This document shows positions 2,253 to 59,985 of a DNA stretch of 64,000 nucleotides, piece after piece (position 1 is the first letter of the stretch; each line of letters opens with the position of its first letter). Where the stretch lies: positions 124,001 through 188,000 of IMG/VR virus record IMGVR_UViG_3300026512_000002; one strand, given 5' to 3'. The notes beneath the pieces were generated by a model. It worked only from the letters and a program-made list of their open reading frames with translations. It did not search any database and was not told where the DNA came from. The translations under genes and the position numbers were made by a program.

Positions 2253-3077
2253 CTATTGATCTTTTAAAGCCATTAACATATCTTTATACCTGTTGTGTTT
2301 AACAACATGTTCTTCTAATGGTGATATTATTGTATCTTCTTCATTTTTAACAATTATATCGTTATCAACAATAAATATTTTACTATCTTTAGTTAAAAGA
2401 TTTTCAGATACATCATACATATTTTCTGATAATATTGATAATTCTTTTATATCTGATTCTGTTATAGGATACACATTACCATATTTATGGTTATAATCAT
2501 CTATGTGTCCAGAATCATCATATTTTTCATTAATAATACCACCATCTAACATGTAGGCTATTTTATGACTAGGTGATAAAACATTATCATATGTTATTAA
2601 TCTAAAAGGTCTATTAACATATATAACACCACCTTTTCTTTTAATATTGCCTAAACCTCTCATACTAAAAGCTGCTTTATGTCCACGTAATATTTCACCT
2701 TTTAATTGTGGCCCAAAACCCATATTTGTTGTTTCCAATATCCCTTCAACGCGGTTATTAACAAAAAATAATTCTAGTATTGCATGGGTTGCTCTTTCAC
2801 GTAACACCATACTTTGTCTAGCAACCTGTTTGGTTAATGGGTGGTCTAGTTCACCATACCAACCATTAGTTGAAACAAGTTCTTGTATTCTTGGGTTATT
2901 ATAACCTTCTTTCAACATATCTTCATCATATATTCTATTATTTCTATTTTGTATAAAATCTTGTAATATTGCTCTGAACTTAATAGTGTTAGCTGTTTTA
3001 CTACCCACTACCTCAATTTCGTTATTGGTAGTCGAAGATTCGTGTATTATATGACCGATAATATTATTTTTACTCAT
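2253..3077 (-). CDS. Prohead maturation protease (T4 gp21-like)
   Basis: Motifs QNRNNRIY, GELDHP, ATH.I, FSMRGLG and LITYD.V.SPSH match the gp21 family. Confidence 0.9.
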   Translation of the reverse strand: MSKNNIIGHIIHESSTTNNEIEVVGSKTANTIKFRAILQDFIQNRNNRIYDEDMLKEGYNNPRIQELVSTNGWYGELDHPLTKQVARQSMVLRERATHAILELFFVNNRVEGILETTNMGFGPQLKGEILRGHKAAFSMRGLGNIKRKGGVIYVNRPFRLITYDNVLSPSHKIAYMLDGGIINEKYDDSGHIDDYNHKYGNVYPITESDIKELSILSENMYDVSENLLTKDSKIFIVDNDIIVKNEEDTIISPLEEHVVKHNRYKDMLMALKDQ

Positions 3078-4132: not shown

Positions 4133-5938
4133 ATGGCTAGAGTAACGGTTGATAAAACTATACCAGCAGCACCAAGAGTTGAAGGAGCTAATGAGTATAT
4201 TAGGGAAGCTATCCATGGAATGAAAAGAGATTATAATGTTGATATGTTAACTGACTATGTTAATGTTAGCAGAAATAATCCAGAATTAATCAATGAGTAT
4301 ATCGATAGAATGGCGGGTAATTTGGACGTTGAAGATGTTGATATGATGAAAGTTAGTGCTAATAACCAAATGATAGATATGGTTACAGAATCAATGTTTG
4401 GTACTATCCAACCTATTGTATCTATGGTATTACCTATTTATCGTAAGTTTTTACCAAAACTTGTTGTTAAGCAGTCAATGCCTACACAACCAGCACCTGC
4501 ACCTACTTTTAAAATTCAGACAATGGAAGAAAAGTATGTTGATATTAGAGGAAAAGAGACAATTCTTAAAGAATATTTTAATGAAGAGTTTAAAAAAGAT
4601 CCATATACATTCGATACTGGGTTGCTTCCTATTTATAAGGATTTTTTACCTATTATAGCATTAGATGATTATAACCTTATTACAGCTAAAAGAAGTGATG
4701 GAACATATCATGCATCAACACCACTTGCTGCTCAATCTTGGTATGCTACTGAGTTAGCACCTAATGGTGTAACACCTCAAGATAGTTTGGGACCAAAATT
4801 ATATATCACTGAAGTTCAGATGGAATTAGGTATTGGAGCAGATGGTGCTGGCGCATATGACGCTACTAACAACGAAATTGTAACAGTTAGAGTTAATGCT
4901 ATTAAAAACCATGAAGGTACTATTTATGCTGATGTTGAATATGTTGCTGATAGTAGTTGGACAACTATGGTACCTAACCAACATTTAGCTGTTCCACAAG
5001 GTACTAAATTTAATGATATTATTATTGGTAAAGTTAACAATGTGACTGATCAAGTTACTATTACAACTGTTAACGATCAAGCTAACCTTGCACCAGTTGC
5101 TGGTGTTTTTAAAGCTGCTATTGTTTCAGCTAAATTCCAAGGACAAGTGTCTAATGAATTAAATAATGTTGTATCTCAAGCTAAACTTGAAATCAATCAT
5201 AAGGAATACACAGTTGGACATGGTGAACATGTTTCAACACCTACACCAATTGAATATATTAAAGATCTTAATGTTATGTATAGTATTGATGGTGCTTTAA
5301 AGTTAACTGATATTATGTCACATGCAATGGCTAATAGAACTGAACTTGAAGCATGGCATTTTCTTGGTAAATCATATGCTGAAAACAATATGGATCTTAG
5401 AGGTTTCCGTGGATGGTTTGATGTTTCACCTGATTCTAATTTTACAGGACTTCCAGTTCAATGGAAAGAAGAAATTAAAGAAATTATTGATAGAGTTGTT
5501 GTTACAATGACTAATGCTTCAGATCATAATATTGGTAAATTTGTTATTTATGGTAATATGATTGATATGAGTGTTATTAAAAATGTTAGTTGGGATGTTA
5601 GAGCTAATAGTGCTACTGAAATCGGTGGTGTTAAAACAGGATATTCTGTTGGTCAATATTTTGGTGCTGCTGGTAATTATGTTTTAGTTGCAAGTTCACA
5701 AATTCCTGATGGTGAAATCAGAATAGTTTACTACCCTGATGATTCAGAAATGTTAACTTATCAATATATGCCATACTCATTCAATATTGTTAATGATGCA
5801 GCATATAGAAATCCTCATGCACCAAACATTCCATCATTGGTTATGTTAAAAAGACATATCTTTGTTGAAGGTACACCTTATCAAGCAGTTATGGAAATTA
5901 AAAATAATACTGTTGATGGTACATTAACATATAGATAG
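4133..5938 (+). CDS. Major capsid protein (HK97 fold, T4 gp23-like), with N-terminal propeptide
   Basis: MVLPIYRKFLPKLVVKQSMPTQP matches the gp23-type start of the mature capsid. EYIKDLNVMYSIDG...LTDIMS matches the gp23 spine helix. Also YMPY near the C-terminus, strong RBS, biased codons, downstream terminator, and a candidate cleavage site VTE86|S. Confidence 0.85.
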   Translation: MARVTVDKTIPAAPRVEGANEYIREAIHGMKRDYNVDMLTDYVNVSRNNPELINEYIDRMAGNLDVEDVDMMKVSANNQMIDMVTESMFGTIQPIVSMVLPIYRKFLPKLVVKQSMPTQPAPAPTFKIQTMEEKYVDIRGKETILKEYFNEEFKKDPYTFDTGLLPIYKDFLPIIALDDYNLITAKRSDGTYHASTPLAAQSWYATELAPNGVTPQDSLGPKLYITEVQMELGIGADGAGAYDATNNEIVTVRVNAIKNHEGTIYADVEYVADSSWTTMVPNQHLAVPQGTKFNDIIIGKVNNVTDQVTITTVNDQANLAPVAGVFKAAIVSAKFQGQVSNELNNVVSQAKLEINHKEYTVGHGEHVSTPTPIEYIKDLNVMYSIDGALKLTDIMSHAMANRTELEAWHFLGKSYAENNMDLRGFRGWFDVSPDSNFTGLPVQWKEEIKEIIDRVVVTMTNASDHNIGKFVIYGNMIDMSVIKNVSWDVRANSATEIGGVKTGYSVGQYFGAAGNYVLVASSQIPDGEIRIVYYPDDSEMLTYQYMPYSFNIVNDAAYRNPHAPNIPSLVMLKRHIFVEGTPYQAVMEIKNNTVDGTLTYR

Positions 5939-6007: not shown

Positions 6008-6034
6008 CAATCACATTGTTAGGTGGGTGTTGAT

Positions 6035-21101: not shown

Positions 21102-21111
21102 AACACCTCCT

Positions 21112-21375
21112 TTAATTTTGTTCGACACCATTTAATAATAATTTTTCATCATCTTCTGTTTTTTCAGGATGCTGTATTCTCATAAACGATTTATACATGT
21201 TATCTAACATGAACATATCGTATTTGTACATAATATCATTCAGCGGTACAGTTTTATCCATACCTAAATAGAAACCCATAATCTCATCCATAGTTGAGGC
21301 ATACTCTTCATTAACAGCTTCGCTTTTCTCAACATATGTTGTATCTAGATTAAAAGGTTTCATCGATGACCCCAT
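21112..21375 (-). CDS. Small ORF overlapping the chaperone gene; probable frameshift extension
   Basis: In the +1 frame relative to 21350..22771 and overlapping its stop at TTT-TAA. Confidence 0.5.
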   Translation of the reverse strand: MGSSMKPFNLDTTYVEKSEAVNEEYASTMDEIMGFYLGMDKTVPLNDIMYKYDMFMLDNMYKSFMRIQHPEKTEDDEKLLLNGVEQN

Positions 21376-47259: not shown

Positions 47260-47363
47260 AATCTCTCCTCATATTACACACACACAAATATAATATATTA
47301 TCGAATATATTGTTAAATAATAGTATGTATAACAATGTATTAAAGATAAATATAGGATTCAAT

Positions 47364-49076
47364 ATGACCGAATTTAACAATACAAACACAATTTTTAAAA
47401 AACTACAAAAAGAATCTAGTACCAATTTACAAGAATTGTTAGATAAAATAAAAGCAGGTGTTCATAAAGACAATGTTAGTACAACAAATTCCAATCTTGA
47501 TTGGTTTAATAAAAGTAATAGTAATACAACTAGAGATGAGTTTGATAAAATTGTATCAGAAACATTAAATGTAACATTGAAAAGACTGATGGAACCTTCA
47601 ACTCAAACATATAAAGGTGATGTTGAACATATGATATCCAAACATAACACTGATGGAATATATTTCCAAACAGCTCCGTTCACTTTTCTATATTTTGTTC
47701 CACCAGATTTAGCAGGTATTGACTACGATTATTTTTCCATAAAAAAAGAAAGGGGTTTTAATGATGTTATATCCGAAGTCTCTAAACAACAAACAGTCAT
47801 AAATGCTGATGCAAATCAACAACATTATGAATTAGCCATTCTTCCAGATGAACTTAAAGGTGTAAATATAGGTTTAAGACAGATGTTGAAACAAGATGTT
47901 GATTACTATCCTATGGCTGATCGACCGACTGGATATAATAATAAAATTTTATTTAATCGTAATACAACTATACCTATACTTAATAATTTTGCAGTACCAT
48001 CTAGTATAAATACTATCGATGGGCAAATGAGTACATTTGATTCCTCTGAAAATGTTATTCTAGTTAAACAGGTTTTGCCTAAAACAATTATAGATAGCTA
48101 TGCTACAAACCAAGTAACAGTTACCTTTAACGAAATAGGTTCTGCAAAATATGGTACAGCTATGATAACGAATCTACATAAAGCGTGGATAAAATACATG
48201 GAGTATGTGGTAAACGGTCAATTAAATCCAACAGCTAAATATACATCAGGTATCAATTATAGAATAAACGAAGAAACTAGAGCATTAGAAGTCAATGTTG
48301 ATGATGACAATGGAACAGCCCAAATAGGTAAAAGTAAAGAATATAGAAGAGCTATAAATTATTTCGGAGCATTATATTATTTTAAATTAGAACCTGATGG
48401 TAAAACATTAGTACATTGGGGTAAATGGACAGGTTTATTTCCTACTCAAATAACATCAAGTACATTTAATAGTGAAAACGGTCATCCTAAAATACAGGTA
48501 CAATACCAAAGTCAATTTTTTGAGGAAAATAATATACAAACACTTATTGAGTTCAACATGTTAAATGTTGTATATAATATCAAATTTAATAAAAATAGTG
48601 CTAATGATGCATATAAGAAGTTGACAGAGTTTTCAGAATTAGATCGAAATATTGCCCTCATAACATATAAAGATACCCAAAAATCTAACACTATTGATCG
48701 CAGATATCAGTTATATGTTGGTAATGAAGTTGAAGAATTATTAACAAAAATTGAACAGAGTAATGATACTGAGAAGCGTGCAAATATTTCAGAATTGGAT
48801 GATAATTCCGGACACTTTTCATTAGTAACCATGGATTCTTTAGATTATCATGATGTTGATACGAAAGACATGGAGCCAGCTACTTTTGATAAAATATTGA
48901 TGAGTAAAAACAATGGTGTCGAATATGTGAAATTCACCGAAGAAGAGATGAATGCTAAAGTTTTTAGTGGTATTGATAATATTATATCTAAAATTGAAAA
49001 TATTAAAGTTAATTCAGCCGATGCGGAAAAAGGTAGAAGTTTAGACAATACCAATACCGATGGTGCAACTAATTGA
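47364..49076 (+). CDS. Tail-tube-like baseplate protein (gp48/gp54-type)
   Basis: F.YF.PPD, VTVTFNE...W..Y...V, YYFKL.PDG...W.K.TGLFP parallels the tube protein 15183..16094; precedes the gp6-like gene; late promoter at 47331-47342. Confidence 0.55.
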   Translation: MTEFNNTNTIFKKLQKESSTNLQELLDKIKAGVHKDNVSTTNSNLDWFNKSNSNTTRDEFDKIVSETLNVTLKRLMEPSTQTYKGDVEHMISKHNTDGIYFQTAPFTFLYFVPPDLAGIDYDYFSIKKERGFNDVISEVSKQQTVINADANQQHYELAILPDELKGVNIGLRQMLKQDVDYYPMADRPTGYNNKILFNRNTTIPILNNFAVPSSINTIDGQMSTFDSSENVILVKQVLPKTIIDSYATNQVTVTFNEIGSAKYGTAMITNLHKAWIKYMEYVVNGQLNPTAKYTSGINYRINEETRALEVNVDDDNGTAQIGKSKEYRRAINYFGALYYFKLEPDGKTLVHWGKWTGLFPTQITSSTFNSENGHPKIQVQYQSQFFEENNIQTLIEFNMLNVVYNIKFNKNSANDAYKKLTEFSELDRNIALITYKDTQKSNTIDRRYQLYVGNEVEELLTKIEQSNDTEKRANISELDDNSGHFSLVTMDSLDYHDVDTKDMEPATFDKILMSKNNGVEYVKFTEEEMNAKVFSGIDNIISKIENIKVNSADAEKGRSLDNTNTDGATN

Positions 49077-49091
49077 TTGTGAGGATAACTT

Positions 49092-51899
49092 ATGGATAAT
49101 ATATTTACAGGTAAATCAACTTATGATATAGAATCATATATTTATGAACTTTCGACTAAATTTTTTAAAAACCAAGATGGTACAAATATACCTGTTAATA
49201 AATTACGTAATGGTCTATATGGTTGGTTGTCAGAAACTCAGAGTAATTTAGCTTTCAACAGTATATCTACGAAATCAGGATTATATGAGGAAAATTTTAT
49301 AAACACAGCTAAATTACCTCAAACCATATACAATAATGCTATTATGTATAATTTTAATGTCAATTTAGCAGAACCGGCGATACTACCAGTTAAATTAAAT
49401 ATTAAATTCGTAGATATTATTAACATCAGTAGGCGTAGCGAACAAGTTTTTAGAATAAGTAATAGTACTGTATTTCAAACTAACGGTATGAATTTTAAGC
49501 TAAGATATGATATTATCATAGAATATAAATTGATAGGTTCCAATATAACTGATGGATCATTATCAGCGACATATGATAAATCTACTGAACAATTTGACAC
49601 ATTTGATACATATGATAAACTAATACCTATCAATTACAACCCAGATACTGGCATGGTAACATTAGTTGTGGATCTATATCAATTGGAAAAAACTGTTACT
49701 ACTTTTGAGTATATTGAACAAGATTCATTTTTAAATAAATCATTTAAAGTTAATTTTTTTGACCAATTATCTAAATTCAGAGTTTTTTATAAGGAAACAC
49801 CTTATTCCGAAAGAATTGAATTAAACACATATTTGGGTTCCGAAGAAGTTAATTTTAATCCAAATGAAAAAAAATGTAATTATGAATATAATGGCACGAA
49901 TAGTTTAAATATATTATTTGTTAGTAATACAGGATTTCGACCTAGTAATAATTCGATAATAGAAGTAGAAACATATACTACAGTAGGTTCATCAGGTAAT
50001 ATTAATTATAATGGGTCTCTCATACCTGTATTTGACAATAAATTTTACTATGATTTAAATATTACTACTACTCCAATAGGTGTGGGTTCTGGTGGATTAG
50101 ATAAACCATCACCAAATGAAATAAAAGCAAGACTATTAGCATGGATACAATCTAAAGGTGAAATGATAACAGATACTGATATTGATAATTATATTAAAAG
50201 TATACAATCACAATATTTGAAAAACAATAGTAAATTTACTATGACTAAAGACCAAAACGATTTATTAAGTCGTTCATATAAATCATATGTATTACTAAAA
50301 GATAACGATAATATAGTTATACCTACTACAACAGTTGATTTGTCATTAAGTTACACAATAATCGAAAGTAATGATATGGATTATTTTAAAAAATCTATGG
50401 ATGGTTCAAAAGTATTGATACCATCCGGTAGTTATATAGTTTTAAAAAAAACCGTGCAAACAAATATGGAAGGTTATGTTATAGCATATAACTATAGCGA
50501 TTATACTGTCTCACAATATCCTGAAGAAAACCTTTTTAATGAAAATGATATGTTACGGGGTAGTGATAACTGGTTATCATATTATAGAAAATATCCTGAC
50601 GCATATACTGTTTATAAAACACCATATGATATATTAATAGATTCCGTACCGTTTTTAAGAGCAGTGTATTATCGAACATCATTAGATGATACATATCAAG
50701 TTAATAAATATAATATGAACCATTTATTTGGAAAAAGTTTCACAATTACTGAATTTGATATATATAGAAATTCTATGAATGGTACGGATAATGATACTTA
50801 TACATTATCATTTGAACTAAACACTAATGTTAATAAAAAATATATCAATAACAATATATTGTCTGGACCCGACAGAAACCAAATAAATGCAATAATATTA
50901 TTTTTCACCAAAGATGATGATGGTAATAGAACATATTATGGTTTTAAAAACTGTGTGTTTGACGAATCTTCTAACGGTAATCCGTATAAATTCTATTCCG
51001 AATTTAAAACATTGTATAAAATGGATGAATATGATTCAACATATCTAAAGTTATTTAAAATAGATAGTGAAACTTCTACAGTTGTTAGTAATACATTACA
51101 AGAAGTTAAAGTGCCTCGTGACGTAAACATATCAATTTTAGTTAACTATGATCCAAATGATGGTAATTCTATAGAAAGCTATTTTCAACCAACTAGTGAT
51201 AATCAACTACAATACGCTTCTAATACAACAGCACCGGATTTATATGATACTGCTATAGATGGTTCTGGAACAACAATAGGGTTAGTAAATATAATAAATG
51301 TTTTAGAAGTTGAGTCTGTTGAACCTGTTAAGATTTTCGTATCATTAGGCAACGTAGTATCATCAAACATAACATATACTGGTCAATCTTATGTGATAAA
51401 GGAATTACCATTAATAACAGCTGATTATATAGAAAATGATGAACGGTTTCAATTCTTTATAAATGCAATAACTAACTATGAAAATATGTTTAAAACAATA
51501 CTATCAAGAATAGATGGTAGTAGTTCACTTAATTTAAAATATTTTAACACTTGTGGTAAATCTAGTAATTTTACAATTAATAATACTGATATAAATATTT
51601 CTTGTGTTATAGGTTTACGAGAACAATATACCCCAATATTAGAAAAAAATATAATTAAACACATAGTATCGTTTATGAATAACATTAATGATATTGATAT
51701 AAATAGATTTTCATTTTCTAATTTATCAACATCATTAGAAAATAATTTTCCACAAATATCAAGCGTTTTCTTAAATGATATAAACGGTCTTAGAGTATAT
51801 GAAATTGATGAAAAAAATGTTAGTGATATTCCGGAATATTTGAATATAGGATATGATTATATAAACAAAAAATTTAAAGTTAAATTAATTTTTAAATAA
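49092..51899 (+). CDS. Baseplate wedge protein (T4 gp6 / P2 gpJ-like)
   Basis: E.FINTA..P.TIY..A......A.PA; RP.NNS.IEV..YTT.GS.GN; GGLD.PS..EIK; ITDTD. Confidence 0.8.
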   Translation: MDNIFTGKSTYDIESYIYELSTKFFKNQDGTNIPVNKLRNGLYGWLSETQSNLAFNSISTKSGLYEENFINTAKLPQTIYNNAIMYNFNVNLAEPAILPVKLNIKFVDIINISRRSEQVFRISNSTVFQTNGMNFKLRYDIIIEYKLIGSNITDGSLSATYDKSTEQFDTFDTYDKLIPINYNPDTGMVTLVVDLYQLEKTVTTFEYIEQDSFLNKSFKVNFFDQLSKFRVFYKETPYSERIELNTYLGSEEVNFNPNEKKCNYEYNGTNSLNILFVSNTGFRPSNNSIIEVETYTTVGSSGNINYNGSLIPVFDNKFYYDLNITTTPIGVGSGGLDKPSPNEIKARLLAWIQSKGEMITDTDIDNYIKSIQSQYLKNNSKFTMTKDQNDLLSRSYKSYVLLKDNDNIVIPTTTVDLSLSYTIIESNDMDYFKKSMDGSKVLIPSGSYIVLKKTVQTNMEGYVIAYNYSDYTVSQYPEENLFNENDMLRGSDNWLSYYRKYPDAYTVYKTPYDILIDSVPFLRAVYYRTSLDDTYQVNKYNMNHLFGKSFTITEFDIYRNSMNGTDNDTYTLSFELNTNVNKKYINNNILSGPDRNQINAIILFFTKDDDGNRTYYGFKNCVFDESSNGNPYKFYSEFKTLYKMDEYDSTYLKLFKIDSETSTVVSNTLQEVKVPRDVNISILVNYDPNDGNSIESYFQPTSDNQLQYASNTTAPDLYDTAIDGSGTTIGLVNIINVLEVESVEPVKIFVSLGNVVSSNITYTGQSYVIKELPLITADYIENDERFQFFINAITNYENMFKTILSRIDGSSSLNLKYFNTCGKSSNFTINNTDINISCVIGLREQYTPILEKNIIKHIVSFMNNINDIDINRFSFSNLSTSLENNFPQISSVFLNDINGLRVYEIDEKNVSDIPEYLNIGYDYINKKFKVKLIFK

Positions 51900-51932
51900 T
51901 AAACAATATATTAAAAACTATAAGGTGATACT

Positions 51933-52697
51933 ATGAATAATGATATTGAACATGCAACAGATATTAAAAAAATTGATAAAGTCATATTAGACGAACTCAA
52001 TGAACAAGTATCGGAAAATTTAATAGAAGTTGTTAATATACTAGATGATATTGGGTATCTTTATGAAGAATATCAAAACAGTGTTAGTGAAAGTGAGTTT
52101 ATTGATAAAACTTCTAAAAAAATCAACTCATATGGTATTAATAATAAAACATATGTTGAATTAGCTAAATATATTGAAAAAAGATATAATGATATTAGAA
52201 ACCTAGATGATTTATTAATACTTGAAAAAGAACTATCGGCTTTACATAAAGCAACATTGGATGTTTTGAAACAAGTTGATGATAAAACACGTGAAATATT
52301 AAGTAAACAAAATAAGAAAATACCTAATGCTGTTAATAAAAGTAGTATTATACAGGGTGCGTTAATAAGTGCTAGTGCTGCTATATTGAATAAAGAAAGA
52401 TTAATGAAATTAGCATTGTCCACAATGAGTGGTAGTGTCGGTAGTGCATTTTTTTTATATACCTCAAGTAGAGGTATTGTGCGTAGTATGAAAGGTTTAA
52501 AAAAAATGGTCAATATAATGTCAAAAACAAATAATATACCAGATACAAGAAAATCGTTAATGCTAATTGCTAGAACATATAAACTATTAAAAAATATAGA
52601 ATCGCATACAAAAAAAAATGAAAAACCAAATATAGGTGAATATAAAAACATGGTCAATATTGATAATAATTATGAGTTTAAAAAATCAAGAGTTTAA
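51933..52697 (+). CDS. Late protein with an acidic propeptide-like N-terminus and a hydrophobic hairpin
   Basis: AACA-N6-TA at 51902-51913; IIQGALISASAAIL and ALSTMSGSVGSAFFLY. Confidence 0.55.
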   Translation: MNNDIEHATDIKKIDKVILDELNEQVSENLIEVVNILDDIGYLYEEYQNSVSESEFIDKTSKKINSYGINNKTYVELAKYIEKRYNDIRNLDDLLILEKELSALHKATLDVLKQVDDKTREILSKQNKKIPNAVNKSSIIQGALISASAAILNKERLMKLALSTMSGSVGSAFFLYTSSRGIVRSMKGLKKMVNIMSKTNNIPDTRKSLMLIARTYKLLKNIESHTKKNEKPNIGEYKNMVNIDNNYEFKKSRV

Positions 52698-52719
52698 TAA
52701 CAATTAATAGAGGTGTATA

Positions 52720-53556
52720 ATGAGTAAACAACTTTTAAATGAAAAAATGTCAAAAGGAAAAGCTTTAAAATTATATAATTCGGTAAAAACCGAATTTTGT
52801 AACATGTCCAATGATGTTGAAAAACGAACATTGCTAAATAACTTAGATAAGATTGAAAAAGCTATGACTAAAGGTTCTGCTGGGAAAATTGGTCTAGCAC
52901 TAGGTTTATTAGCAGCAGCTGGTGGAGCTTATGCTGCTTACAGTGCTCATGTACATGGTTCTGATGCTGAACATGAAATGTCAGGTATACGTGATATGGA
53001 TCAAATTGAAAACCCTGTAACTGATCAACTGGAACCTGAAGCAACAGCTAAAACTGTTCCAGTTTTCAAAAATAGAGAAACTGGTAAATATTTCTTAAAT
53101 CCTAAAGATTATACTATGGATAAATATAAAAAAATCAAAGCATATAGAGCTGATGGTAAGTGGGTTGGTAGAGAACAATTTGAGAAAATTTCTAAAAATC
53201 TTAAAGGTATAAATACCCAACGTGCTTTAAATAATGCTAGGATAATGAAACAAGGTATCCAATATGATCAAGCCGCAAAAAGAATTAAAGAATACAATCA
53301 AAATAATATTATTAAGCGAGATATGTTATCTAATTTAGTTAATAAATATCATAATAAACAAAATGCTGGTATCGCTACTGGTGTAATTGGTGGTATTATA
53401 GCTGCTGGTAGCAACTTGTTAAAAGGTGGCGATCGTACCGAAATAACTAAAGCTAAAGCAATCGTAGGTTCAATGAAAAAATATATCTCAAAAGTAAAAC
53501 CAGGTAAACAAAAGTGTGCTGATTTTGATAAAAAATTTAAACATTACTTCATATAG
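52720..53556 (+). CDS. Cassette-family membrane-hairpin protein (one module)
   Basis: LLNE|...FCNM...KG.AGKI.L (TM1) [variable] (TM2)...KVKPGKQKC.DFDKKF. Confidence 0.7.
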   Translation: MSKQLLNEKMSKGKALKLYNSVKTEFCNMSNDVEKRTLLNNLDKIEKAMTKGSAGKIGLALGLLAAAGGAYAAYSAHVHGSDAEHEMSGIRDMDQIENPVTDQLEPEATAKTVPVFKNRETGKYFLNPKDYTMDKYKKIKAYRADGKWVGREQFEKISKNLKGINTQRALNNARIMKQGIQYDQAAKRIKEYNQNNIIKRDMLSNLVNKYHNKQNAGIATGVIGGIIAAGSNLLKGGDRTEITKAKAIVGSMKKYISKVKPGKQKCADFDKKFKHYFI

Positions 53557-53562
53557 GAGAAT

Positions 53563-55326
53563 ATGATGATACATACACTTAGTGAAAATTCTAGTAGTAA
53601 ATTATTAAACGAAGGTTTTTTTGAAAATAAAAGACTTAGGTTATATAATTCAATAAAAATAAGTTTTTGTAACATGGATACAGCTGTTGATAAACAAGTG
53701 TTAATAGACACATTGAAACAATCATCTACAGCATTAACAAAAGGTAAAGCTGGTAAAATTGCGTTAGGATTAGCTGGACTAGCGATAGGTGGTATTGGTG
53801 CATACGCTTCTTATAAAGCTGGTATGGATGTTGATTCCCTTAATAAGGATTTAGATGCAATACCGACTACCGCAAATGATGGTAGTAATAGTTTAGCTAA
53901 TATGGCTAATGCTACTGCACGATCATTATATGGTAGACATGTAGCTGATGCTACAAATATAGAAAATGGTGGCAAATTGGCAATAGGTGTAGGTGCATTA
54001 CTAAGTATTGTATCCACTGTAATAAGATCTGGAAATAGTTCCGATATCAGTAGATCTAAAGCAATAATAGACACTATTATTCAATATATTTCAAAAGTAA
54101 AACCAGGTAAACAAAAGTGTGTTGAGTTTGATAAAAAATTTAAACAATTTTTTATTAATGAAAGTTATAATAGTGATATCAGCAATAGTGATGATAATGT
54201 TGTGGTAGAAATGGATGTTGTAAGTGAAGGGATATCTAATCTATTAGCCCTATATAATGATGCGTTACCAGAGTCTATCTCAGATAATATTCTTAATGAA
54301 CTATTAACAGACGCATTGTTTTTGTTCAACGAAACAGTTAATTTTGAAAATGTTAGTGAGTTTACAACACCTACATTCATAGAGGATTATGCTTTTATGA
54401 CAGAAGGTGGAGTGTTATCTGAAAACACCAAAGACACTATTACAAATACAGGTGAATTGGCAACATATAAGAAAAACATCGTATCAGCAATATTTGAAAA
54501 TACTTCAGACAACGATAGTGTCGAAATCAACTCCTTTACTGTTAGTAAAATTATATTAGTGGAGATGTTAGATGGTTTAGGTTTACTACAAAACATATCT
54601 GAGTCTAACCCACAAATTATCACAGATACTGTGTGTAAAATGAGTTTATTAGATGAAGCTAGTAAAAGCAAACCATTCAGATTGCTCGGTTCTATTAGAA
54701 AAGAATTTTGTCATATGAAAACTACAAAAGATAAAGAAAAATTATTGAAACGACTAGATGGGTCTGTTAAAGCTTTAAGTAAAGGTAAAGCTGGTAAAAT
54801 TGCTTTAGGATTAGCTGGACTAGCAGCGTTAGCAGGCGGGGCATATATGGCCTATGATGCAATGAAAAATGGTGAAAATATAAAAGATTCTGAAAATGGG
54901 CTTTTAAGCACACTTAAGAATGCGCATACTAGAGCAGGATTTACTCAACAAGAAACATCTAATGGTAAAACTATTACTAAACATTTTTTAACTAAAATGG
55001 GTGGTGTTGCTGAACCTACAACTAAACTTGGTTACGAGGCCAATAACCTTAGTAATAAAGCGATATCACACTTATCTGCTAATAAAGATAATATAAAGAA
55101 AGCTTTTTCGGGAGCTATAAAAGATGAAGAAAATAGAGCACTTACTGGAAAAACAATAGCGAAAGCAGGTGCTATTGTTGGACTAACATCACTGTTATTA
55201 AAATCCGGTAATAAGAAAGATATATCTGAATCTGAAAAAGTTATCAAAAACGTAATATCTTATGTTAAGTCAGTAAAACCTGGTAAACAAGATTGTGTTG
55301 ACTTTGATAAAAAATTTCTAATATAA
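53563..55326 (+). CDS. Cassette-family polyprotein (two modules separated by an acidic spacer)
   Basis: Two further copies of the module in 52720..53556, linked by a Glu-site-rich spacer. Confidence 0.7.
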   Translation: MMIHTLSENSSSKLLNEGFFENKRLRLYNSIKISFCNMDTAVDKQVLIDTLKQSSTALTKGKAGKIALGLAGLAIGGIGAYASYKAGMDVDSLNKDLDAIPTTANDGSNSLANMANATARSLYGRHVADATNIENGGKLAIGVGALLSIVSTVIRSGNSSDISRSKAIIDTIIQYISKVKPGKQKCVEFDKKFKQFFINESYNSDISNSDDNVVVEMDVVSEGISNLLALYNDALPESISDNILNELLTDALFLFNETVNFENVSEFTTPTFIEDYAFMTEGGVLSENTKDTITNTGELATYKKNIVSAIFENTSDNDSVEINSFTVSKIILVEMLDGLGLLQNISESNPQIITDTVCKMSLLDEASKSKPFRLLGSIRKEFCHMKTTKDKEKLLKRLDGSVKALSKGKAGKIALGLAGLAALAGGAYMAYDAMKNGENIKDSENGLLSTLKNAHTRAGFTQQETSNGKTITKHFLTKMGGVAEPTTKLGYEANNLSNKAISHLSANKDNIKKAFSGAIKDEENRALTGKTIAKAGAIVGLTSLLLKSGNKKDISESEKVIKNVISYVKSVKPGKQDCVDFDKKFLI

Positions 55327-55347
55327 TATTTTATAATATTTAATAAA

Positions 55348-55400
55348 ATCGATAATAGTAGTGGATGATCATATATATGTCATCCGCTATTATTATCGAT
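55348..55400 (+). other. 21-bp intergenic RNA hairpin without a U-tract
   Basis: ATCGATAATAGTAGTGGATGA / TCATCCGCTATTATTATCGAT with two G-U pairs. Confidence 0.7.
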
Positions 55401-55462
55401 CATTACACTAATAAGATCATGTTAATTAACAATGGATTAAATAACTATTATAAGGACACATA

Positions 55463-56278
55463 ATGTATACAGAATCAAATATAGAAACATTATCTAATAC
55501 CATATTAAAAGAATCATCAATAGCTAGATCTACTTTTAATGTGTTAACACCAACTATAGATTATAAAGCACTACATAGCTATAATTCAGCTTTAGTTGAG
55601 CCTAGTCAAGGTGTTTTGGATAGAACAGTAGAAGCTATTATGCGCTTTATTGAAAATATTGTTAAAAAAATGAATAATTTATGGTTCAATAGAGCTAAAT
55701 TTGTTAAAAACAATGAGCGTATAATAGTAAATGGGTATGATAAAATGATGGGTGATAGAGATGTTGTTGTTAGATTGGAACCTATAAATGTAGTGAATCG
55801 TAAATATATAAAAGATTTACGCAATCTACGAAATCGTATCTTGAAACAAGTTGATCGTAAATTTATAGTCGGTCATAATTTACCTAGAAACTTTAATAGT
55901 GTATCTGTAAGACGAATTGAGTTTATGGATATTATGACTAGAATCAACGAATACCCACTTTCTATAGAACCTCAAGATTGGATCGATTTCATAGATCATA
56001 TAAAAAGGTTTTATAGAAGTGATTTAGAGAATATTGAAAATGGTAAAAAAGAAATTATGTTAAGATATAAATATATTAGACATGAAGTTGAAACAGGTGA
56101 ACGAACAATACTAGCTTTGCCAAAAGCTAAACAACCAACTGTTGATAAAACAGTTACACTTATAAGATCTAAATTGAGTTTAATTATGGACATTTATAAT
56201 GCTGAACTAGAAGCATTGGAACATATGTATCTTGCCATGTATAGAGCATTGAGAATATTTTATGATTATGGTAAGTGA
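55463..56278 (+). CDS. Internal head protein family member
   Basis: Late promoter at 55428-55439; GVLDRTVEAIMRFIENIVKKM...FVKNNERIIVNG similar to 42553 and 58530. Confidence 0.55.
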   Translation: MYTESNIETLSNTILKESSIARSTFNVLTPTIDYKALHSYNSALVEPSQGVLDRTVEAIMRFIENIVKKMNNLWFNRAKFVKNNERIIVNGYDKMMGDRDVVVRLEPINVVNRKYIKDLRNLRNRILKQVDRKFIVGHNLPRNFNSVSVRRIEFMDIMTRINEYPLSIEPQDWIDFIDHIKRFYRSDLENIENGKKEIMLRYKYIRHEVETGERTILALPKAKQPTVDKTVTLIRSKLSLIMDIYNAELEALEHMYLAMYRALRIFYDYGK

Positions 56279-57256
56279 TTAATTACGTCTACCGTTTCTA
56301 TTACCGTTTCTATTATTATTATTCTTATTCTTTTTTTTGGTGACACCAGCATCTGGATTTTTAGCTACAAACCCCATATTTTTTAAATTATTTTTTAAAC
56401 TTGCATCAGATCTACTATAAGCACCTTCCAACTCGCGAAGTCTTGTACCAACTAATATCGTCACCTTATCCATTATACTTGCAAGTAACGATACACTCTT
56501 TTTCAATAAAATTTTTAATTTACTAAAAAGATTTTTAGTTATTTTTGTTTTAAATATATGTGCTCTTTTAATTTTAGCTCCAGTATTTGCATTTTCTCTG
56601 CTCTGAATAACCTTGTTTCTATCAATAAATCTTTTAAGTAAATCTCTATCAGCTTGTAAACTATCTTCGATATTATCTATCCCACCATTAATATTTTTCA
56701 AATTGCCGTATATTGTAGCAACTCCTGTTATATCGTATGGTGACTTAGGAATATTGTTTATAGCAATTAATGAATTTTCTCTAAGAATTTCTTCGTACTT
56801 TTTATAAATACTATCAATAGCTGATAACCCACTATTAGTATCACCTCCTTCAGCAATATCTAATAATTTTCTAGTGAAATCAAAAACGGTTTTTTTAAGT
56901 TTAAAAAGTTTAGTTAAACTTGTGGTGAACCTAGCATCGTTCATAAGTAAATATGTTTTATTTTTTAATGTTTCTGTTGCTTTAGCACCACTTGTATCTT
57001 CACTAGCATATTGTATAGTATCTCCTAAAGCCGACATACGTTCACTCCACTTATCTGTACTATCTTTATTAGCTTCAATTTTTTTTAATATAGCACCAAT
57101 GAAACCAGTTATAGCAGAACCAATACCCAGTGCTAATGCACCTTCTTCTAACATTATTTCTTTTACAATATCCGCAGTATCGTCATCGAGATTACTTAAT
57201 ATATTTCTATCTACATATTCTTCAATTAACATATTTTTATACAATGAATCATTCAT
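56279..57256 (-). CDS. Internal head protein family member with an R/N-rich tail
   Basis: Start MNDSLY at 57256; LEE|GALALGIGSAITGFIGAILKKI; C-terminus NNNNRNGNRNGRRN. Confidence 0.55.
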   Translation of the reverse strand: MNDSLYKNMLIEEYVDRNILSNLDDDTADIVKEIMLEEGALALGIGSAITGFIGAILKKIEANKDSTDKWSERMSALGDTIQYASEDTSGAKATETLKNKTYLLMNDARFTTSLTKLFKLKKTVFDFTRKLLDIAEGGDTNSGLSAIDSIYKKYEEILRENSLIAINNIPKSPYDITGVATIYGNLKNINGGIDNIEDSLQADRDLLKRFIDRNKVIQSRENANTGAKIKRAHIFKTKITKNLFSKLKILLKKSVSLLASIMDKVTILVGTRLRELEGAYSRSDASLKNNLKNMGFVAKNPDAGVTKKKNKNNNNRNGNRNGRRN

Positions 57257-57275
57257 ATCATACCCCATATTTTTA

Positions 57276-58520
57276 TTACAATCTAATAGCTGTATTATCG
57301 ATTTGTTTATTTTTATTTTTAACAACTTTAGCTATAGCATTTCTCAAATTAGCTATTGTTGGATCAGTACTATCGAGAACATATTCAACTATTTTATTAA
57401 ACCTATTATCAACTAAATCATACAAACTAGTTAATACACTGCCTTGATAACTAGATGCTTTTTGCACATAATTAACATAACTAGTTAATAACCTCGCACC
57501 AGTTTCACCTGATTCAGCTTTTTTAGTAGCATCTTTTTTATTATTAATTCTCACATTGGTAATAGCTTTATCACCAGTTTTTTTAAAAAACTTTTCTTTC
57601 GCAGCATATATCTGCCTACGCATTTCTATTGTTGATAATGTTTTATTATTTCTAATTTTCATTTCAATATCAGTTGGTAATTCAACATCATCAACAGTTT
57701 CCTGTTTCTTAGCATACTTCTTACCATGTGCTAATAACTTATCATAACCTATTTCTAAGTTTTCCATACTTTTTGGTAGCTCAGTAAAAATCTTACTCAT
57801 ATTAGTATAAAATTGACTGATACGTACACCATTCAACTTGTTATATCTTGCTTTACCAATACCTGTGAATTCACTGAGAATATTTTTACCAGTAGCAACA
57901 CTTTTTATAGGTGTTGTAAAATTACATAATTTTTTAGTAACAATTACCAGTTCAGCACCACTATAGTTTGTAAAGTTATTTTTATCAGTAGCTTTAGTTT
58001 TAGCTTCCGTGACTAATTTATAATTAGCTGATAATGTTTTTTTCATATCAGTTAAATTCATATCACCTATCATATATAATGGATTAGCATCATTTAATAT
58101 TTTAGAAGTTAGTTTGGACATAGTATCGTAATCATACTCTTTTAAAAACTTAATATATTCGCCACCTATTTCAGAATACACATCTTGTTTCAACAACGAA
58201 ACCTCACCTTGACTTTTTATCACTTTTAGTTGCTCAATATTATTACTTAATATTTCAGCAGTATTGGTTCTAGCAGCAGCTTTGTTAGCACCTTTACCAA
58301 ATATTGCTTTGATAGCATCAAGAATGAGTTTAAAACTATTACCCACACCGCTATCTCCAGTAATATCCCCTATAGTTTCTATCACAACATTATCTAAATA
58401 TTCCTTCAGATCCTCAAATTGTTCTAACAAATTTATAATATCAGCAGATTCTTGTGTTTTTTGCTCTATAAACAATAATTCATCATTAAGCTGATCATAT
58501 AACGTATTGTACATATTCAT
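57276..58520 (-). CDS. Internal head protein family member
   Basis: Acidic N-terminus, VIE|T, amphipathic SFKLILDAIKAIFG, basic body. Confidence 0.55.
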   Translation of the reverse strand: MNMYNTLYDQLNDELLFIEQKTQESADIINLLEQFEDLKEYLDNVVIETIGDITGDSGVGNSFKLILDAIKAIFGKGANKAAARTNTAEILSNNIEQLKVIKSQGEVSLLKQDVYSEIGGEYIKFLKEYDYDTMSKLTSKILNDANPLYMIGDMNLTDMKKTLSANYKLVTEAKTKATDKNNFTNYSGAELVIVTKKLCNFTTPIKSVATGKNILSEFTGIGKARYNKLNGVRISQFYTNMSKIFTELPKSMENLEIGYDKLLAHGKKYAKKQETVDDVELPTDIEMKIRNNKTLSTIEMRRQIYAAKEKFFKKTGDKAITNVRINNKKDATKKAESGETGARLLTSYVNYVQKASSYQGSVLTSLYDLVDNRFNKIVEYVLDSTDPTIANLRNAIAKVVKNKNKQIDNTAIRL

Positions 58521-58529
58521 ACCACACCC

Positions 58530-59387
58530 CTATTTTGAATCTTCGGCAATAACATTATCCTTTTTCATTTCCTTAGTTTTAAAAGATTTAGCTGTTTCAA
58601 ACAATTTTACATATTCCATAGCTATAGCAATCGCAACAGTATCAATAGTCTTGGAAACAATAAATATTGATTTTAAAAACAATATAACCTGTTTCACCAA
58701 CTTATTTACATCTGGTAAATGCTCATTACTACTTATATCCATGTTTTTTAACATAGGTATATTTTTATGTATACTAGAAATAAAATCATTCATATCATTA
58801 ACACTGTCACCTAGACCATTAGTAATATCTACTAACGTAATAACATATTTTCTCAATTCTGAGGATTTATCGATAACTTTATTAGTTACACTACATATAT
58901 TACCAACATGCTTAGAAATCTCTTTGGTTGATAATTTCTTTTTATCATTAAGTAGTTCTTTAATAATATCAGTATATTTGTCAACATCAGTGTTTTTCAA
59001 TGCATCAAGAGTAATATTTTTTACAAACTTATCCAGTGATTCTGTTAGATCGGAAGCGACTTTTAATAAATCATCTAATCTATCGATATTAACAATTAAT
59101 GTATCCTTGTCCATCTTTTTTAATCCCAATATAATATTACTTTTATTAGTTTTGATAAACTTACATTTCTGTTCAAATTTACTATATTCTTCACCACTAT
59201 CTTTAAAAGTTTTTTTAATGTCATTAAACACTTTTTCAATACCTGATAAGAAACTTCTAAATAATGCTGGTGATACGCTTTCAAGAGTGACATTTTCAAG
59301 CAACATTACCCTATTAACATTAGTAGTGTATGTGTTGGCCAATCTTTGTAATTCTAAAATACTTTCATCAAATATAAAATTATGCAT
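58530..59387 (-). CDS. Internal head protein family member
   Basis: AGGAG RBS; late promoter at 59415-59426; TLE|S...FRSFLSGIEKVF...IKTNKSNIILGLKK. Confidence 0.55.
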   Translation of the reverse strand: MHNFIFDESILELQRLANTYTTNVNRVMLLENVTLESVSPALFRSFLSGIEKVFNDIKKTFKDSGEEYSKFEQKCKFIKTNKSNIILGLKKMDKDTLIVNIDRLDDLLKVASDLTESLDKFVKNITLDALKNTDVDKYTDIIKELLNDKKKLSTKEISKHVGNICSVTNKVIDKSSELRKYVITLVDITNGLGDSVNDMNDFISSIHKNIPMLKNMDISSNEHLPDVNKLVKQVILFLKSIFIVSKTIDTVAIAIAMEYVKLFETAKSFKTKEMKKDNVIAEDSK

Positions 59388-59553
59388 TTTATGTTCTCCT
59401 TAAACCTATTAATTTAATATATTGTTAAACTTAAAAAAAATGAAACTATGATATATTATAAACTAAACTTGTTTTCATTAATATATTATGATAATGTGTC
59501 TCAAATTAATCTTATCCCATATTGATAAGATTAAACAACTAATAGGAGGAATT

Positions 59554-59877
59554 ATGATTGATCGAGCATTAGTCAAACATCATGCTAGTGATGCTATTTT
59601 ATTCAACATTGAACATTTTGAATCTTATATCGGATATTTACAATATAAGGATAAATGTATGATTATACCAATTACCATTGACGAATTTAAGAAACAACTG
59701 TGCGACTATAATGATGATTGCGGTTTATTAAAATTTAACAATTTAGAAGAACTAAAAAAAAGCGATATGTTTTTACATCAAAATAAATCGGATCAGTATT
59801 ATATAGATACGATGTTTGCTCGTAGTAGTATATATGATATATTTATAGATAAAGGTACTATACTCATACATAAGTAA
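59554..59877 (+). CDS. Hypothetical protein
   Basis: AGGAGGA RBS before ATG 59554. Confidence 0.6.
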   Translation: MIDRALVKHHASDAILFNIEHFESYIGYLQYKDKCMIIPITIDEFKKQLCDYNDDCGLLKFNNLEELKKSDMFLHQNKSDQYYIDTMFARSSIYDIFIDKGTILIHK

Positions 59878-59985
59878 ATTATCTTTCAACAAAATGTGTT
59901 ATAAGATAATAGTTGAGTATATTATAACAAACATTAAATTACATAGTAAATATTATCTAAATTAACATATTGTGAAGGAGATTCT

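What the first reader, a model, noticed from the sequence alone, without database searches (positions are those of the whole stretch)
52720..55326. Three-copy 'conserved frame + swappable insert' membrane-hairpin cassette, partly encoded as a protease-cleavable polyprotein
Seen: one module occurs three times, once in 52720..53556 and twice in 53563..55326. Each copy starts after an LL[ND]E site, then has K.L[KR]L..S[VI][KR]..FC.M...K..L...L......[LM][TS]KG.AGKI.L, a Gly/Ala-rich hydrophobic helix (TM1), an unrelated insert (about 140, 50 and 95 aa), a second Gly-rich hydrophobic helix (TM2), and Y[IV]..VKPGKQ.C..FDKKF. Each module has exactly one conserved Cys near each end, possibly a closing disulfide. 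The DNA flanking the inserts is near-identical (53740-53783 vs 54781-54824, 43/44 nt; 53488-53518 vs 54091-54121, 31/31 nt) while the inserts share nothing. Inference: head-packaged proteins, freed by the gp21-like protease, that insert as hairpins into the host membrane on ejection and display a variable loop. They could form an injection channel or early-infection membrane compartment, or act as anti-defence/exclusion effectors, with loops exchanged by recombination between the conserved frames.
Basis: partly seen in the sequence, partly recalled or inferred. Interest (0 to 1): 0.85.

Follow-up and report, generated by a model that had tools for sequence, protein, structure and literature searches.

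The report
Repeated hydrophobic-hairpin module, jumbo phage
Two adjacent genes of an uncultured giant phage carry three copies of a protein module found nowhere else: two glycine-rich greasy helices around a variable loop, each copy preceded by a likely cutting site for the phage's head protease. They are probably packaged proteins freed by cleavage, but no experiment has tested this.

Summary
ORF A (52720-53556) and ORF B (53563-55326) hold exactly three copies of one module: a basic N-frame, a Gly/Ala-rich helix, an unrelated insert (141, 53 and 101 aa), a second Gly-rich helix, and a basic C-frame. Each copy follows an LL[ND]E site.

The host genome is a 227.7-kb AR9/PBS1/phiR1-37-like jumbo phage. 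An exhaustive profile search found no relative of the module.

Support for the cleavable-precursor reading:
- The window encodes a gp21-like S77 prohead protease.
- The clade's capsid protein is cut after hydrophobic-x-Glu. This site was measured in phiR1-37 and is conserved in the window.
- An I-N-E site after module 2 would give it the same C-terminus as modules 1 and 3.
- The ORF B spacer is very acidic (pI 4.1) and enriched in such sites.
- The genes sit in an operon with homologues of virion proteins.

Weaknesses:
- The site motif is common.
- The "TM" helices are only marginally hydrophobic.
- Nothing shows packaging, ejection or loop swapping. Codon bias explains most of the DNA identity.

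Best reading (about 0.4): these are head-internal precursors, like T4 internal proteins or SPN3US gp47. This is a new variant of a known kind.

The parts
52720..53556 (+). ORF A, 278 aa (31.0 kDa, pI 9.8): one module. RBS GAGGTG lies upstream.
52720..52743 (+). ORF A leader of 8 aa ending L-L-N-E. Candidate capsid-targeting and cleavage leader.
   Evidence: inference from the MCP site
52744..52887 (+). Module 1 N-frame (basic, net +6; Cys27).
52888..52944 (+). Module 1 first Gly/Ala-rich helix (58% Gly+Ala).
52945..53367 (+). Module 1 insert, 141 aa, unrelated to the other two inserts.
53368..53421 (+). Module 1 second Gly-rich helix (GxxxGxxxGxxxA pattern).
   Evidence: read from the sequence
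53422..53553 (+). Module 1 C-frame (net +9; Cys266; VKPGKQ.C..FDKKF).
53554..53562 (+). TAG stop of ORF A plus two codons. ORF B follows in the same reading frame, and its AGGAG RBS overlaps the TAG.
53563..55326 (+). ORF B, 587 aa (63.3 kDa): leader, module 2, acidic spacer, module 3.
53563..53613 (+). ORF B leader of 17 aa ending L-L-N-E.
53614..54162 (+). Module 2 (183 aa, 19.5 kDa, pI 9.5), ending at the candidate site F-I-N-E|S. The AF2 model is all-helical (pLDDT 71, pTM 0.68).
54163..54657 (+). Acidic spacer (165 aa, pI 4.1, net about -26) rich in hydrophobic-x-Glu motifs and ending L-L-D-E. Candidate pro-region.
54658..55323 (+). Module 3 (222 aa, 23.8 kDa, pI 9.9).
55348..55400 (+). 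Stem-loop directly after ORF B (-31.1 kcal/mol, z -8.7). Likely end of the transcription unit 47310-55326.
2253..3077 (-). gp21-like prohead serine protease (Peptidase_S77), the presumed processing enzyme.
4133..5938 (+). Major capsid protein. M-V-T-E86|S87 aligns with the measured maturation site of phiR1-37 g135.
47310..51899 (+). Upstream genes of the same cluster: homologues of AR9 g213 (virion protein) and g212.

Best explanation
ORF A and ORF B encode a lineage-specific family of late, virion-associated proteins, most likely head-internal, in an AR9/PBS1-like jumbo phage. They are made as precursors.

Proposed steps:
1. A short N-terminal leader (8 or 17 aa) and, in ORF B, a 165-aa acidic spacer carry the modules into the prohead core. 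This is analogous to T4 capsid-targeting sequences and the propeptides of giant-phage head proteins.
2. The gp21-like S77 protease cuts after hydrophobic-x-Glu: LLNE8 in ORF A, and LLNE17, INE200 and LLDE365 in ORF B. It probably also cuts several times inside the spacer.
3. Three basic all-helical proteins of about 30, 20 and 24 kDa (pI 9.5-9.9) remain with the DNA.
4. In each protein the two marginally hydrophobic Gly/Ala-rich helices are probably buried between the frame helices while the protein is soluble.
5. On ejection those helices could insert into the host membrane, with the variable insert between them.

Shown: the module anatomy, the protease gene, the clade's cleavage specificity at the capsid protein, the charge and motif pattern, and the synteny.
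Inferred: packaging, cleavage at these sites, ejection, and membrane insertion. Membrane insertion is the least certain step.
For: - Three modules with conserved frames and unrelated inserts.
- About 40% of identical residues use different codons, so conservation acts on the protein.
- Strong RBSs precede both ORFs.
- S77 protease is present in the window.
- phiR1-37 MCP has its mature N-terminus at Ser87, after L-Q-E. The site is conserved as V-T-E|S in the window MCP.
- A conserved LL[ND]E precedes each module.
- I-N-E|S after module 2 reproduces the natural C-termini of modules 1 and 3.
- The spacer has pI 4.1 and is enriched in the motif (P 0.003-0.005).
- Mature parts have pI 9.5-9.9.
- Gaps of 15, 33, 22 and 6 nt link the genes to homologues of AR9 g213 (virion protein) and g212. 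Homologues of virion proteins (AR9 g214, phiR1-37 g208-g210) lie next to them.
- In the closest relative (L006) the same position holds a g211-family protein, a family whose phiR1-37 member g206 is annotated structural. That protein carries two Gly/Ala-hydrophobic repeats, each starting after [LI]-x-E and ending [LV]-[NT]-E|S.
- Precedent: SPN3US gp47 is a protease-processed head ejection protein whose mature part begins with a predicted TM helix, and it sits at a fast-diverging locus (PMC5694885).
- Multiple motif copies inside propeptides are also seen in SPN3US (PMC10052503).
Against: - The motif is frequent: [LIV]xE occurs once per 64 aa, and the four-residue form occurs in the first 40 aa of 20 of 53 ORFs, including GroEL and terminase.
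- The mature modules are not significantly depleted of it.
- No homologue exists anywhere, so there is no proteomic or genetic evidence.
- The neighbouring structural genes are not shown to be head rather than tail genes.
- AR9 g212 itself is not annotated as a virion protein.
- Homology between the window modules and the L006 repeats is unproven. hhalign gives E 7e-4 and probability 26%, and a control does not single them out.
- Charge distribution also fits an ordinary N-in/C-in membrane protein.
- Four of the five AF2 models of module 2 are poor.
Confidence: 0.4

Rival explanations
1. These are ordinary phage-encoded membrane proteins of the infected cell. They are not packaged and not cleaved. 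ORF A would be a 2-helix hairpin and ORF B a 4-helix protein, both N-in/C-in. The basic frames and the acidic spacer would face the cytoplasm and the variable inserts would face the outside. Possible roles are superinfection exclusion, lysis timing or a membrane anchor for assembly.
For: - The positive-inside pattern fits: frames are +3 to +11 and flank uncharged helices.
- The first helix is preceded by K-G-K-A-G-K.
- GxxxG-type motifs are typical of membrane helix packing (read from the sequence).
- There is a weak Pfam DUF1206 match to a membrane-helix model.
- The LL[ND]E motif is too common to prove cleavage.
Against: - The helices are marginal for translocon insertion, at +2.2 to +6.7 kcal/mol. 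That is the same range as a hydrophobic stretch of the soluble GroEL homologue.
- The best AF2 model is one compact helical fold (pTM 0.68).
- This reading does not explain why the conserved LL[ND]E sits exactly at each module start, why INE|S sits at the module 2 end, or why the spacer is motif-enriched.
- PHROG and PADLOC-independent scans give no holin or exclusion family.
- At 278 and 587 aa the proteins are far larger than holins.
Confidence: 0.27
2. These are packaged or scaffold-associated soluble helical proteins with no membrane step. The Gly/Ala-rich helices are simply the buried core of a helical bundle. The proteins would serve as DNA-condensing internal proteins or as prohead-core components.
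For: - The helices are only marginally hydrophobic.
- The model is compact and all-helical.
- The mature parts are very basic.
- The acidic, motif-rich spacer resembles the scaffold and core proteins that T4-type proteases degrade (background in PMC5694885).
Against: - Uncharged stretches of 16-19 residues with 44-58% Gly+Ala and GxxxG spacing, conserved in all three copies, are unusual for soluble cores.
- They resemble SAR domains or fusion-peptide-like segments. The best PDB sequence hit is a paramyxovirus F fusion-peptide region, at E 0.019, which is not significant.
Confidence: 0.15
3. These are virion proteins of the tail or baseplate lumen (pilot or channel proteins delivered with the tape measure). 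They would be outside the reach of the prohead protease, so the LL[ND]E sites would be irrelevant.
For: - In AR9 the syntenic block (g204 tape measure, g205, g212-g216) lies in a tail-proximal structural region.
- In L007 the gene upstream of the 935-aa homologue carries a tail-tube-like Pfam domain.
Against: - This reading gives no explanation for the acidic, motif-rich spacer or for the conserved boundaries.
- There is no similarity to any tail protein family.
Confidence: 0.1

Closest known systems
SPN3US gp47 (positional counterparts phiKZ gp86 and 201phi2-1 gp148): essential head ejection protein processed by the prohead protease (PMC5694885)
   Same: - A giant phage with a gp21-like protease.
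- An N-terminal pro-region removed at an x-x-Glu site.
- A predicted hydrophobic helix in the mature part.
- The gene is nested among conserved virion genes at a locus that diverges beyond recognition between relatives.
- The window locus is likewise a variable island between conserved anchors.
   Different: - No sequence similarity.
- gp47 has one helix at the mature N-terminus, no repeated module, no two-module precursor and no variable insert between helices.
- Its protease prefers A/S/G-x-E, whereas here the motif is L/I/V-x-E.
T4 internal proteins (IPI-III, Alt) with capsid-targeting sequences cut by gp21 after L/I-x-E (established knowledge; summarised in PMC5694885)
   Same: - Short N-terminal leaders (8 and 17 aa here, 10-20 aa in T4) ending in hydrophobic-x-Glu.
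- An S77 protease is encoded.
- The mature products are basic.
   Different: - No homology.
- T4 internal proteins have no hydrophobic helices and are not multi-module precursors.
- Packaging is shown for T4 and only inferred here.
phiKZ/SPN3US inner-body or paralog-family-A proteins (PF12699)
   Same: - Paralogous head-internal proteins with long propeptides that contain several cleavage motifs.
- Copy number varies between phages.
   Different: - Pfam PF12699 is not detected.
- Different fold features, and the phage belongs to a different clade (AR9-like, not Chimalliviridae).
L006 620-aa protein (Logan SRR31655982 contig), a g211-family protein with two internal hydrophobic repeats
   Same: - Same genomic position, directly after the 935-aa protein homologue (42% identity).
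- Repeated Gly/Ala-rich hydrophobic units with a K-rich helical lead-in.
- Each unit is bracketed by [LIV]-x-E.
- It shares the 'NESYN' junction with the end of module 2.
   Different: - Homology is not demonstrable.
- There is no long insert between the helices.
- The repeats are embedded in a g211-like protein, whereas the window's g211 homologue lies at 39642-40667(-) and has no such repeats.
Pfam DUF1206 (PF06724), described as a pair of transmembrane helices repeated within bacterial proteins (description from memory)
   Same: A Gly/Ala-rich helix preceded by basic residues. Full-length ORF B scores 28.1 bits against a cut-off of 26.2.
   Different: Only one 38-residue stretch matches, covering half of the model. 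The separate modules score 14.6-17.7 bits, below the cut-off. This is similarity of one helix, not membership.

Membership tests
Substrates of T4-type (S77) prohead protease / CTS-bearing internal head proteins | The phage encodes a gp21-like S77 protease. | tested here: met
   Peptidase_S77 at 41.6 bits against a cut-off of 27, plus PHROG head maturation protease, at 2253-3077(-).
Substrates of T4-type (S77) prohead protease / CTS-bearing internal head proteins | A cleavage motif of the kind this clade's protease uses, placed at the end of a short N-terminal leader or pro-region. | tested here: met
   LLNE8, LLNE17 and LLDE365. The clade's MCP site L/V-x-E|S comes from the phiR1-37 annotation plus the alignment. 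Caveat: the motif is common.
Substrates of T4-type (S77) prohead protease / CTS-bearing internal head proteins | The protein is present in virions with an N-terminus created by the protease. | not testable with these tools
   The phage is known only from a metagenome. No relative has proteomics.
phiKZ-like internal head proteins (PF12699) | A match to the family profile. | tested here: not met
   No Pfam hit even at E <= 5.
AR9 g211 / phiR1-37 g206 family | A profile match to the conserved N- and C-terminal motifs. | tested here: not met
   hhalign of A3 against ORF B gives E 0.64. The window's true member is 39642-40667(-).
DUF1206 (PF06724) | A domain-level match over the model at or above the gathering score. 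| tested here: inconclusive
   Whole ORF B scores 28.1 bits against 26.2, but through one 38-residue half-model stretch. The modules alone score 14.6-17.7 bits.
Holins (two-TMD classes) | A small protein (usually under 150 aa) with clearly hydrophobic TMDs, a holin family match, and a lysis-gene neighbourhood. | tested here: not met
   The proteins are 278 and 587 aa. There is no PHROG or Pfam holin hit. The helices are marginal. The neighbours are structural-gene homologues.
Glycine-zipper Pfam families (Gly-zipper_Omp/OmpA/YMGG, Rick_17kDa_Anti) | A profile match. | tested here: not met
   Not among the Pfam hits at E <= 5.
Any solved or predicted fold family | A significant Foldseek or sequence match. 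| tested here: not met
   Best E is 1.4 for PDB and 0.8 for BFVD. PDB sequence search gives best E 0.019, on a Gly/Ala-rich fusion-peptide stretch.

The most novel reading that the evidence does not exclude
The most novel reading not excluded is a previously unrecognised class of capsid-packaged, protease-released amphitropic proteins. Each would be a basic helical bundle hiding a marginally hydrophobic glycine-zipper helix pair. After ejection the pair would open into the host membrane, forming a channel or seeding an early-infection membrane structure, and would display a lineage-variable loop.

The same design (tandem Gly/Ala-helix units separated by cleavable acidic spacers, encoded in virion modules) may have arisen repeatedly. 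Candidate examples are the window, the L006 620-aa protein, and P0003 in the head module of L013.
Probability: 0.2. Interest if true: 0.75.

Novelty: new variant of a known kind. Interest (0 to 1): 0.5.

Why it matters
Giant phages with virion RNA polymerases must deliver many proteins along with their DNA. How the first minutes of infection are organised at the membrane is an open question; the EPI vesicle of phiKZ-like phages is one example. Almost nothing is known about this for the AR9/PBS1 clade, which infects Gram-positive hosts.

If this reading is right, the family would give a sequence-defined, synthesisable candidate for a membrane-active ejected protein. It would also be an example of a multi-module precursor cut by a T4-type head protease.

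The practical value is limited. The family exists in a single metagenomic contig, and every functional step is inferred.

Tried and rejected
1. Homologue searches all returned only the source contig. These were the word-indexed search of 5.8e9 proteins with ORF A, the exhaustive profile search of 1.84e9 representatives with the three-module alignment, the IMG/VR and JGI metagenome pattern scans, and phage DNA blastn. Three weak Gly-zipper hits also appeared.

2. PHROGs, Pfam, PDB sequence search and Foldseek against PDB and BFVD gave no family.

3. I tested whether the ORF B spacer is the displaced AR9 g211-like domain ('LYNDALPES', 'ILVEMLDGLGLL'). This is rejected: hhalign gives E 0.64. The real g211 homologue is 39642-40667(-).

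4. I tested whether the L006 repeats are homologous to the window modules. Profile-profile comparison gives E 7e-4 and probability 26%. A control against all window ORFs does not rank ORF A or B first, and BLASTP is not significant. I keep this as an analogy only.

5. I tested whether the mature modules are depleted of cleavage motifs. They are not significantly depleted (0 against 1.27 expected; 3 against 5.15).

6. I tested for stop-codon recoding or read-through of the in-frame TAG between ORF A and ORF B. TAG ends 13 of 53 ORFs, including those for the capsid and sheath proteins, and the window has no tRNA.

7. AF2 of whole ORF A was too poor to use (pLDDT 45).

8. AR9 g211, g214 and g215 were compared with the flanking window ORFs. 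Only the g213, g212 and g214 relationships hold.

9. The AR9 genome paper (PMC13189113) is not held in the library.
Full report
**Source genome.** The window is AT-rich (about 27% G+C). It covers bases 124001-188000 of a 227,696-bp IMG/VR contig, IMGVR_UViG_3300026512_000002, which is the same as Ga0256842_1000004. It encodes:
- a major head protein (4133-5938);
- a large terminase;
- a tail sheath;
- a GroEL homologue;
- split RNA-polymerase beta-type subunits.

The capsid protein is 25-29% identical to those of Bacillus phages AR9, PBS1 and BpSp, Yersinia phage phiR1-37 and the Staphylococcus jumbo phages. The source is therefore a distant, uncultured member of the AR9-like jumbo phages. Shine-Dalgarno sequences are strong (GAGGTG, AGGAG).

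**The observation.** ORF A (52720-53556, 278 aa) and ORF B (53563-55326, 587 aa) contain three copies of one module.
- HMMs of the N-frame and the C-frame find exactly these three places in the six-frame translation (domain E 1e-35 to 1e-44). Nothing else scores below E 0.2.
- No other paralogues exist among 53 window ORFs.
- The LL[ND]E sites, the Cys pairs and both DNA identities (43/44 and 31/31) are as stated. One extra Cys lies in the spacer.
- The three inserts (141, 53 and 101 aa) are unrelated by Smith-Waterman against shuffles.

Three corrections apply:
The corrected pattern matches all three copies.
- The frames are only 40-52% identical in protein and 56-66% in DNA. The same-codon rate among identical residues equals what the genome's codon bias predicts (z <= 1.8).
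- Only the two short patches exceed that expectation, and modestly (P 0.0065 and 0.03).

So these are old duplicates conserved at the protein level. They may have had short-tract homogenisation, but they are not near-identical DNA frames.

**An orphan family.** No relative was found by any of these searches:
- the word-indexed search of 5.8e9 proteins;
- the exhaustive profile search of 1.84e9 cluster representatives;
- pattern scans of IMG/VR and JGI metagenomes;
- blastn against phage genomes.

PHROGs, Pfam, PDB sequences and Foldseek gave no family. The only formal Pfam hit is DUF1206 at 28.1 bits. It rests on one 38-residue helix and falls below the cut-off when the modules are scanned separately.

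**Evidence on cleavage.**
- The window has a Peptidase_S77 (gp21-like) head maturation protease at 2253-3077(-).
- phiR1-37 g135 is annotated 'mature N-terminus at Ser87', so it is cut after M-L-Q-E. The aligned residues are M-V-T-E|S in the window capsid protein and I-L-Q-E|S in AR9. The clade's protease therefore cuts after hydrophobic-x-Glu, like T4 gp21. L-L-N-E|K, L-L-N-E|G and L-L-D-E|A fit this.
- Module 2 is followed by F-I-N-E|S (B197-200). Cutting there would leave a C-terminus two residues beyond the point where modules 1 and 3 end naturally (…FI stop, …LI stop).
- The 165-166-aa spacer between modules 2 and 3 has net charge -26 and pI 4.1. It contains 10 [LIV]xE motifs (4.6 expected, P 0.005) and 6 four-residue motifs (1.56 expected, P 0.003). 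The predicted mature modules have pI 9.5-9.9.

Acidic pro-regions with several cleavage motifs, removed from basic mature parts, are what T4 and the phiKZ/SPN3US group show (PMC5694885 and PMC10052503).

Against this:
- The motif is common, at one [LIV]xE per 64 aa.
- The four-residue form occurs in the first 40 residues of 20 of 53 ORFs, including GroEL and terminase.
- The modules are not significantly depleted of it.

**Genomic context.** Genes 47310-55326 are on one strand with gaps of 15, 33, 22 and 6 nt. They end at a strong stem-loop (55348-55400, -31.1 kcal/mol, z -8.7).

| Window gene | Homologue |
|---|---|
| 47310-49076 | AR9 g213 'virion protein' (E 4e-19) |
| 49092-51899 | AR9 g212 |
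| 44793-46547(-) | AR9 g214 'minor virion structural protein' |

In phiR1-37 the corresponding genes g203-g206 and g208-g210 are annotated as structural proteins.

The closest relative is L006, a 77.9-kb Logan contig with 42% identity on the 935-aa protein. Comparison with it shows conserved anchors (43681, 44793, 47310, 49092, 59986) around a variable island. In L006 the island holds a 620-aa protein with these features:
- Its C-terminal part belongs to the AR9 g211 / phiR1-37 g206 family (hhalign 88%, E 3e-6).
- Its middle carries two repeats of a K-rich helical lead-in plus a Gly/Ala-rich hydrophobic stretch.
- Each repeat begins after [LI]-x-E and ends …VKSIK-[LV]-[NT]-E|S.
- Its first repeat ends with the same 'NESYN' as window module 2. 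A shared 5-mer somewhere is expected by chance with P 0.37, so only its position is suggestive.

Homology of these repeats to the window modules is not established. I treat them as a positional and architectural analogue. The L006 protein is also a singleton.

**The hydrophobic helices.**
- They contain 22-58% Gly+Ala and carry GxxxG-type spacing.
- They are uncharged or, in the second helices of modules 2 and 3, net +2 from Lys/Arg near their ends. Basic residues flank them.
- Kyte-Doolittle peaks are 1.35-2.0.
- An additive translocon-scale estimate, with scale values recalled from Hessa et al. 2005, gives +2.2 to +6.7 kcal/mol. Clear TM segments in three other window ORFs give -3.9 to 0.0, and a stretch of the soluble GroEL homologue gives +3.2.

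AF2 of mature module 2 gives one compact all-helical model with eight helices (pLDDT 71, pTM 0.68). The other four models are poor. ORF A as a whole is poorly predicted, except for the frame helices.

'Membrane hairpin' is therefore a hypothesis. The helices could equally be a buried core that inserts only on a trigger, or never inserts.

**Synthesis.** The best-supported reading (confidence about 0.4) is that these are precursors of head-internal proteins. They would be targeted by short leaders and an acidic spacer, and freed by the S77 protease as three basic proteins of 20-30 kDa. The membrane step after ejection is the weakest link.

The rivals are:
- ordinary N-in/C-in membrane proteins of the infected cell (0.27);
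- packaged or scaffold proteins with no membrane role (0.15);
- tail-lumen proteins (0.10).

Loop exchange by recombination, a closing disulfide, and any channel, compartment or anti-defence role remain untested.

The nearest known things are SPN3US gp47 and its positional counterparts, T4 internal proteins with capsid-targeting sequences, and the multiply cleaved phiKZ inner-body paralogues. None is homologous. The repeated 'frame + insert' module and the two-module precursor are new features, so I rate this a new variant of a known kind.

The stop between ORF A and ORF B was respected, and the pieces were searched apart.

Noticed in passing
window 53545-53575: ORF A and ORF B are in the same reading frame, separated only by TAG plus two codons. 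'…HYFI-stop-EN' lines up with module 2's '…QFFI-N-ES', so the stop sits at the middle position of the candidate I-x-E site. This suggests a former three-module precursor. TAG is a normal stop here (13 of 53 ORFs), the window has no tRNA, and in-frame placement has a 1-in-3 chance.
   Followed up: partly
window 55348-55400: A 24-pair stem-loop lies directly after ORF B (-31.1 kcal/mol, z -8.7 against shuffles). It has no U-tract. It probably marks the end of the 47310-55326 transcription unit.
   Followed up: yes
window 56279-57325 (-): This 348-aa ORF has an acidic N-terminal region, then M-L-E-E followed at once by a Gly-zipper helix (GALALGIGSAITGFIGAIL, the fourth most hydrophobic stretch among the 53 window ORFs at about +1.1 kcal/mol). 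It ends in an Asn/Arg/Lys-rich tail. It looks like an SPN3US gp47-type protein, with a cleavage site next to a hydrophobic N-terminus. It has no family hit.
   Followed up: partly
window 51933-52697 (+): This 254-aa ORF lies between the 935-aa protein and ORF A. Its first 40 residues are acidic (-8, with ILDE/LNE motifs). Its C-terminal half is basic and has two weakly hydrophobic Ser/Ala/Gly-rich stretches. It has no homologues in PHROGs or Pfam.
   Followed up: partly
L006:8379-10241: The 620-aa protein of the closest relative is a g211-family protein with two inserted Gly/Ala-hydrophobic repeats. Each repeat is bracketed by [LIV]-x-E. The protein is also a database singleton.
   Followed up: yes
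L013:4082-5518 (protein P0003): This 478-aa protein has four tandem repeats. Each repeat has an 'AGKIGVGVGG…GYGLY' Gly-zipper helix between acidic stretches. It is encoded between the large terminase and a protein with a head-maturation-protease-like domain, upstream of the major head protein. It may be an independent example of tandem hydrophobic-helix units in a head module.
   Followed up: partly
window 39642-40667 (-): The window's homologue of AR9 g211 / phiR1-37 g206 lies about 12 kb from its usual position after the g212 homologue. It is very acidic (net -30).
   Followed up: yes
window 51900-59985: The content between the conserved anchors 49092-51899 and 59986-61098 differs completely from that of the closest relative: about 8 kb and 8 ORFs here, against about 2.4 kb and 2 ORFs in L006. 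This is a variable island inside the structural region.
   Followed up: partly
window 4133-5938: The major capsid protein (601 aa) carries roughly 70-80 extra residues relative to AR9 and phiR1-37, in two insertions (alignment columns about 190-300 and 325-337).
   Followed up: no
window 6023-6565; 19320-21131; 61107-62144: A small M48-like zincin lies next to the capsid gene, as with the AR9 g118 'zincin protease'. The window also has a GroEL homologue and an HD-domain plus polynucleotide-kinase-like protein.
   Followed up: no
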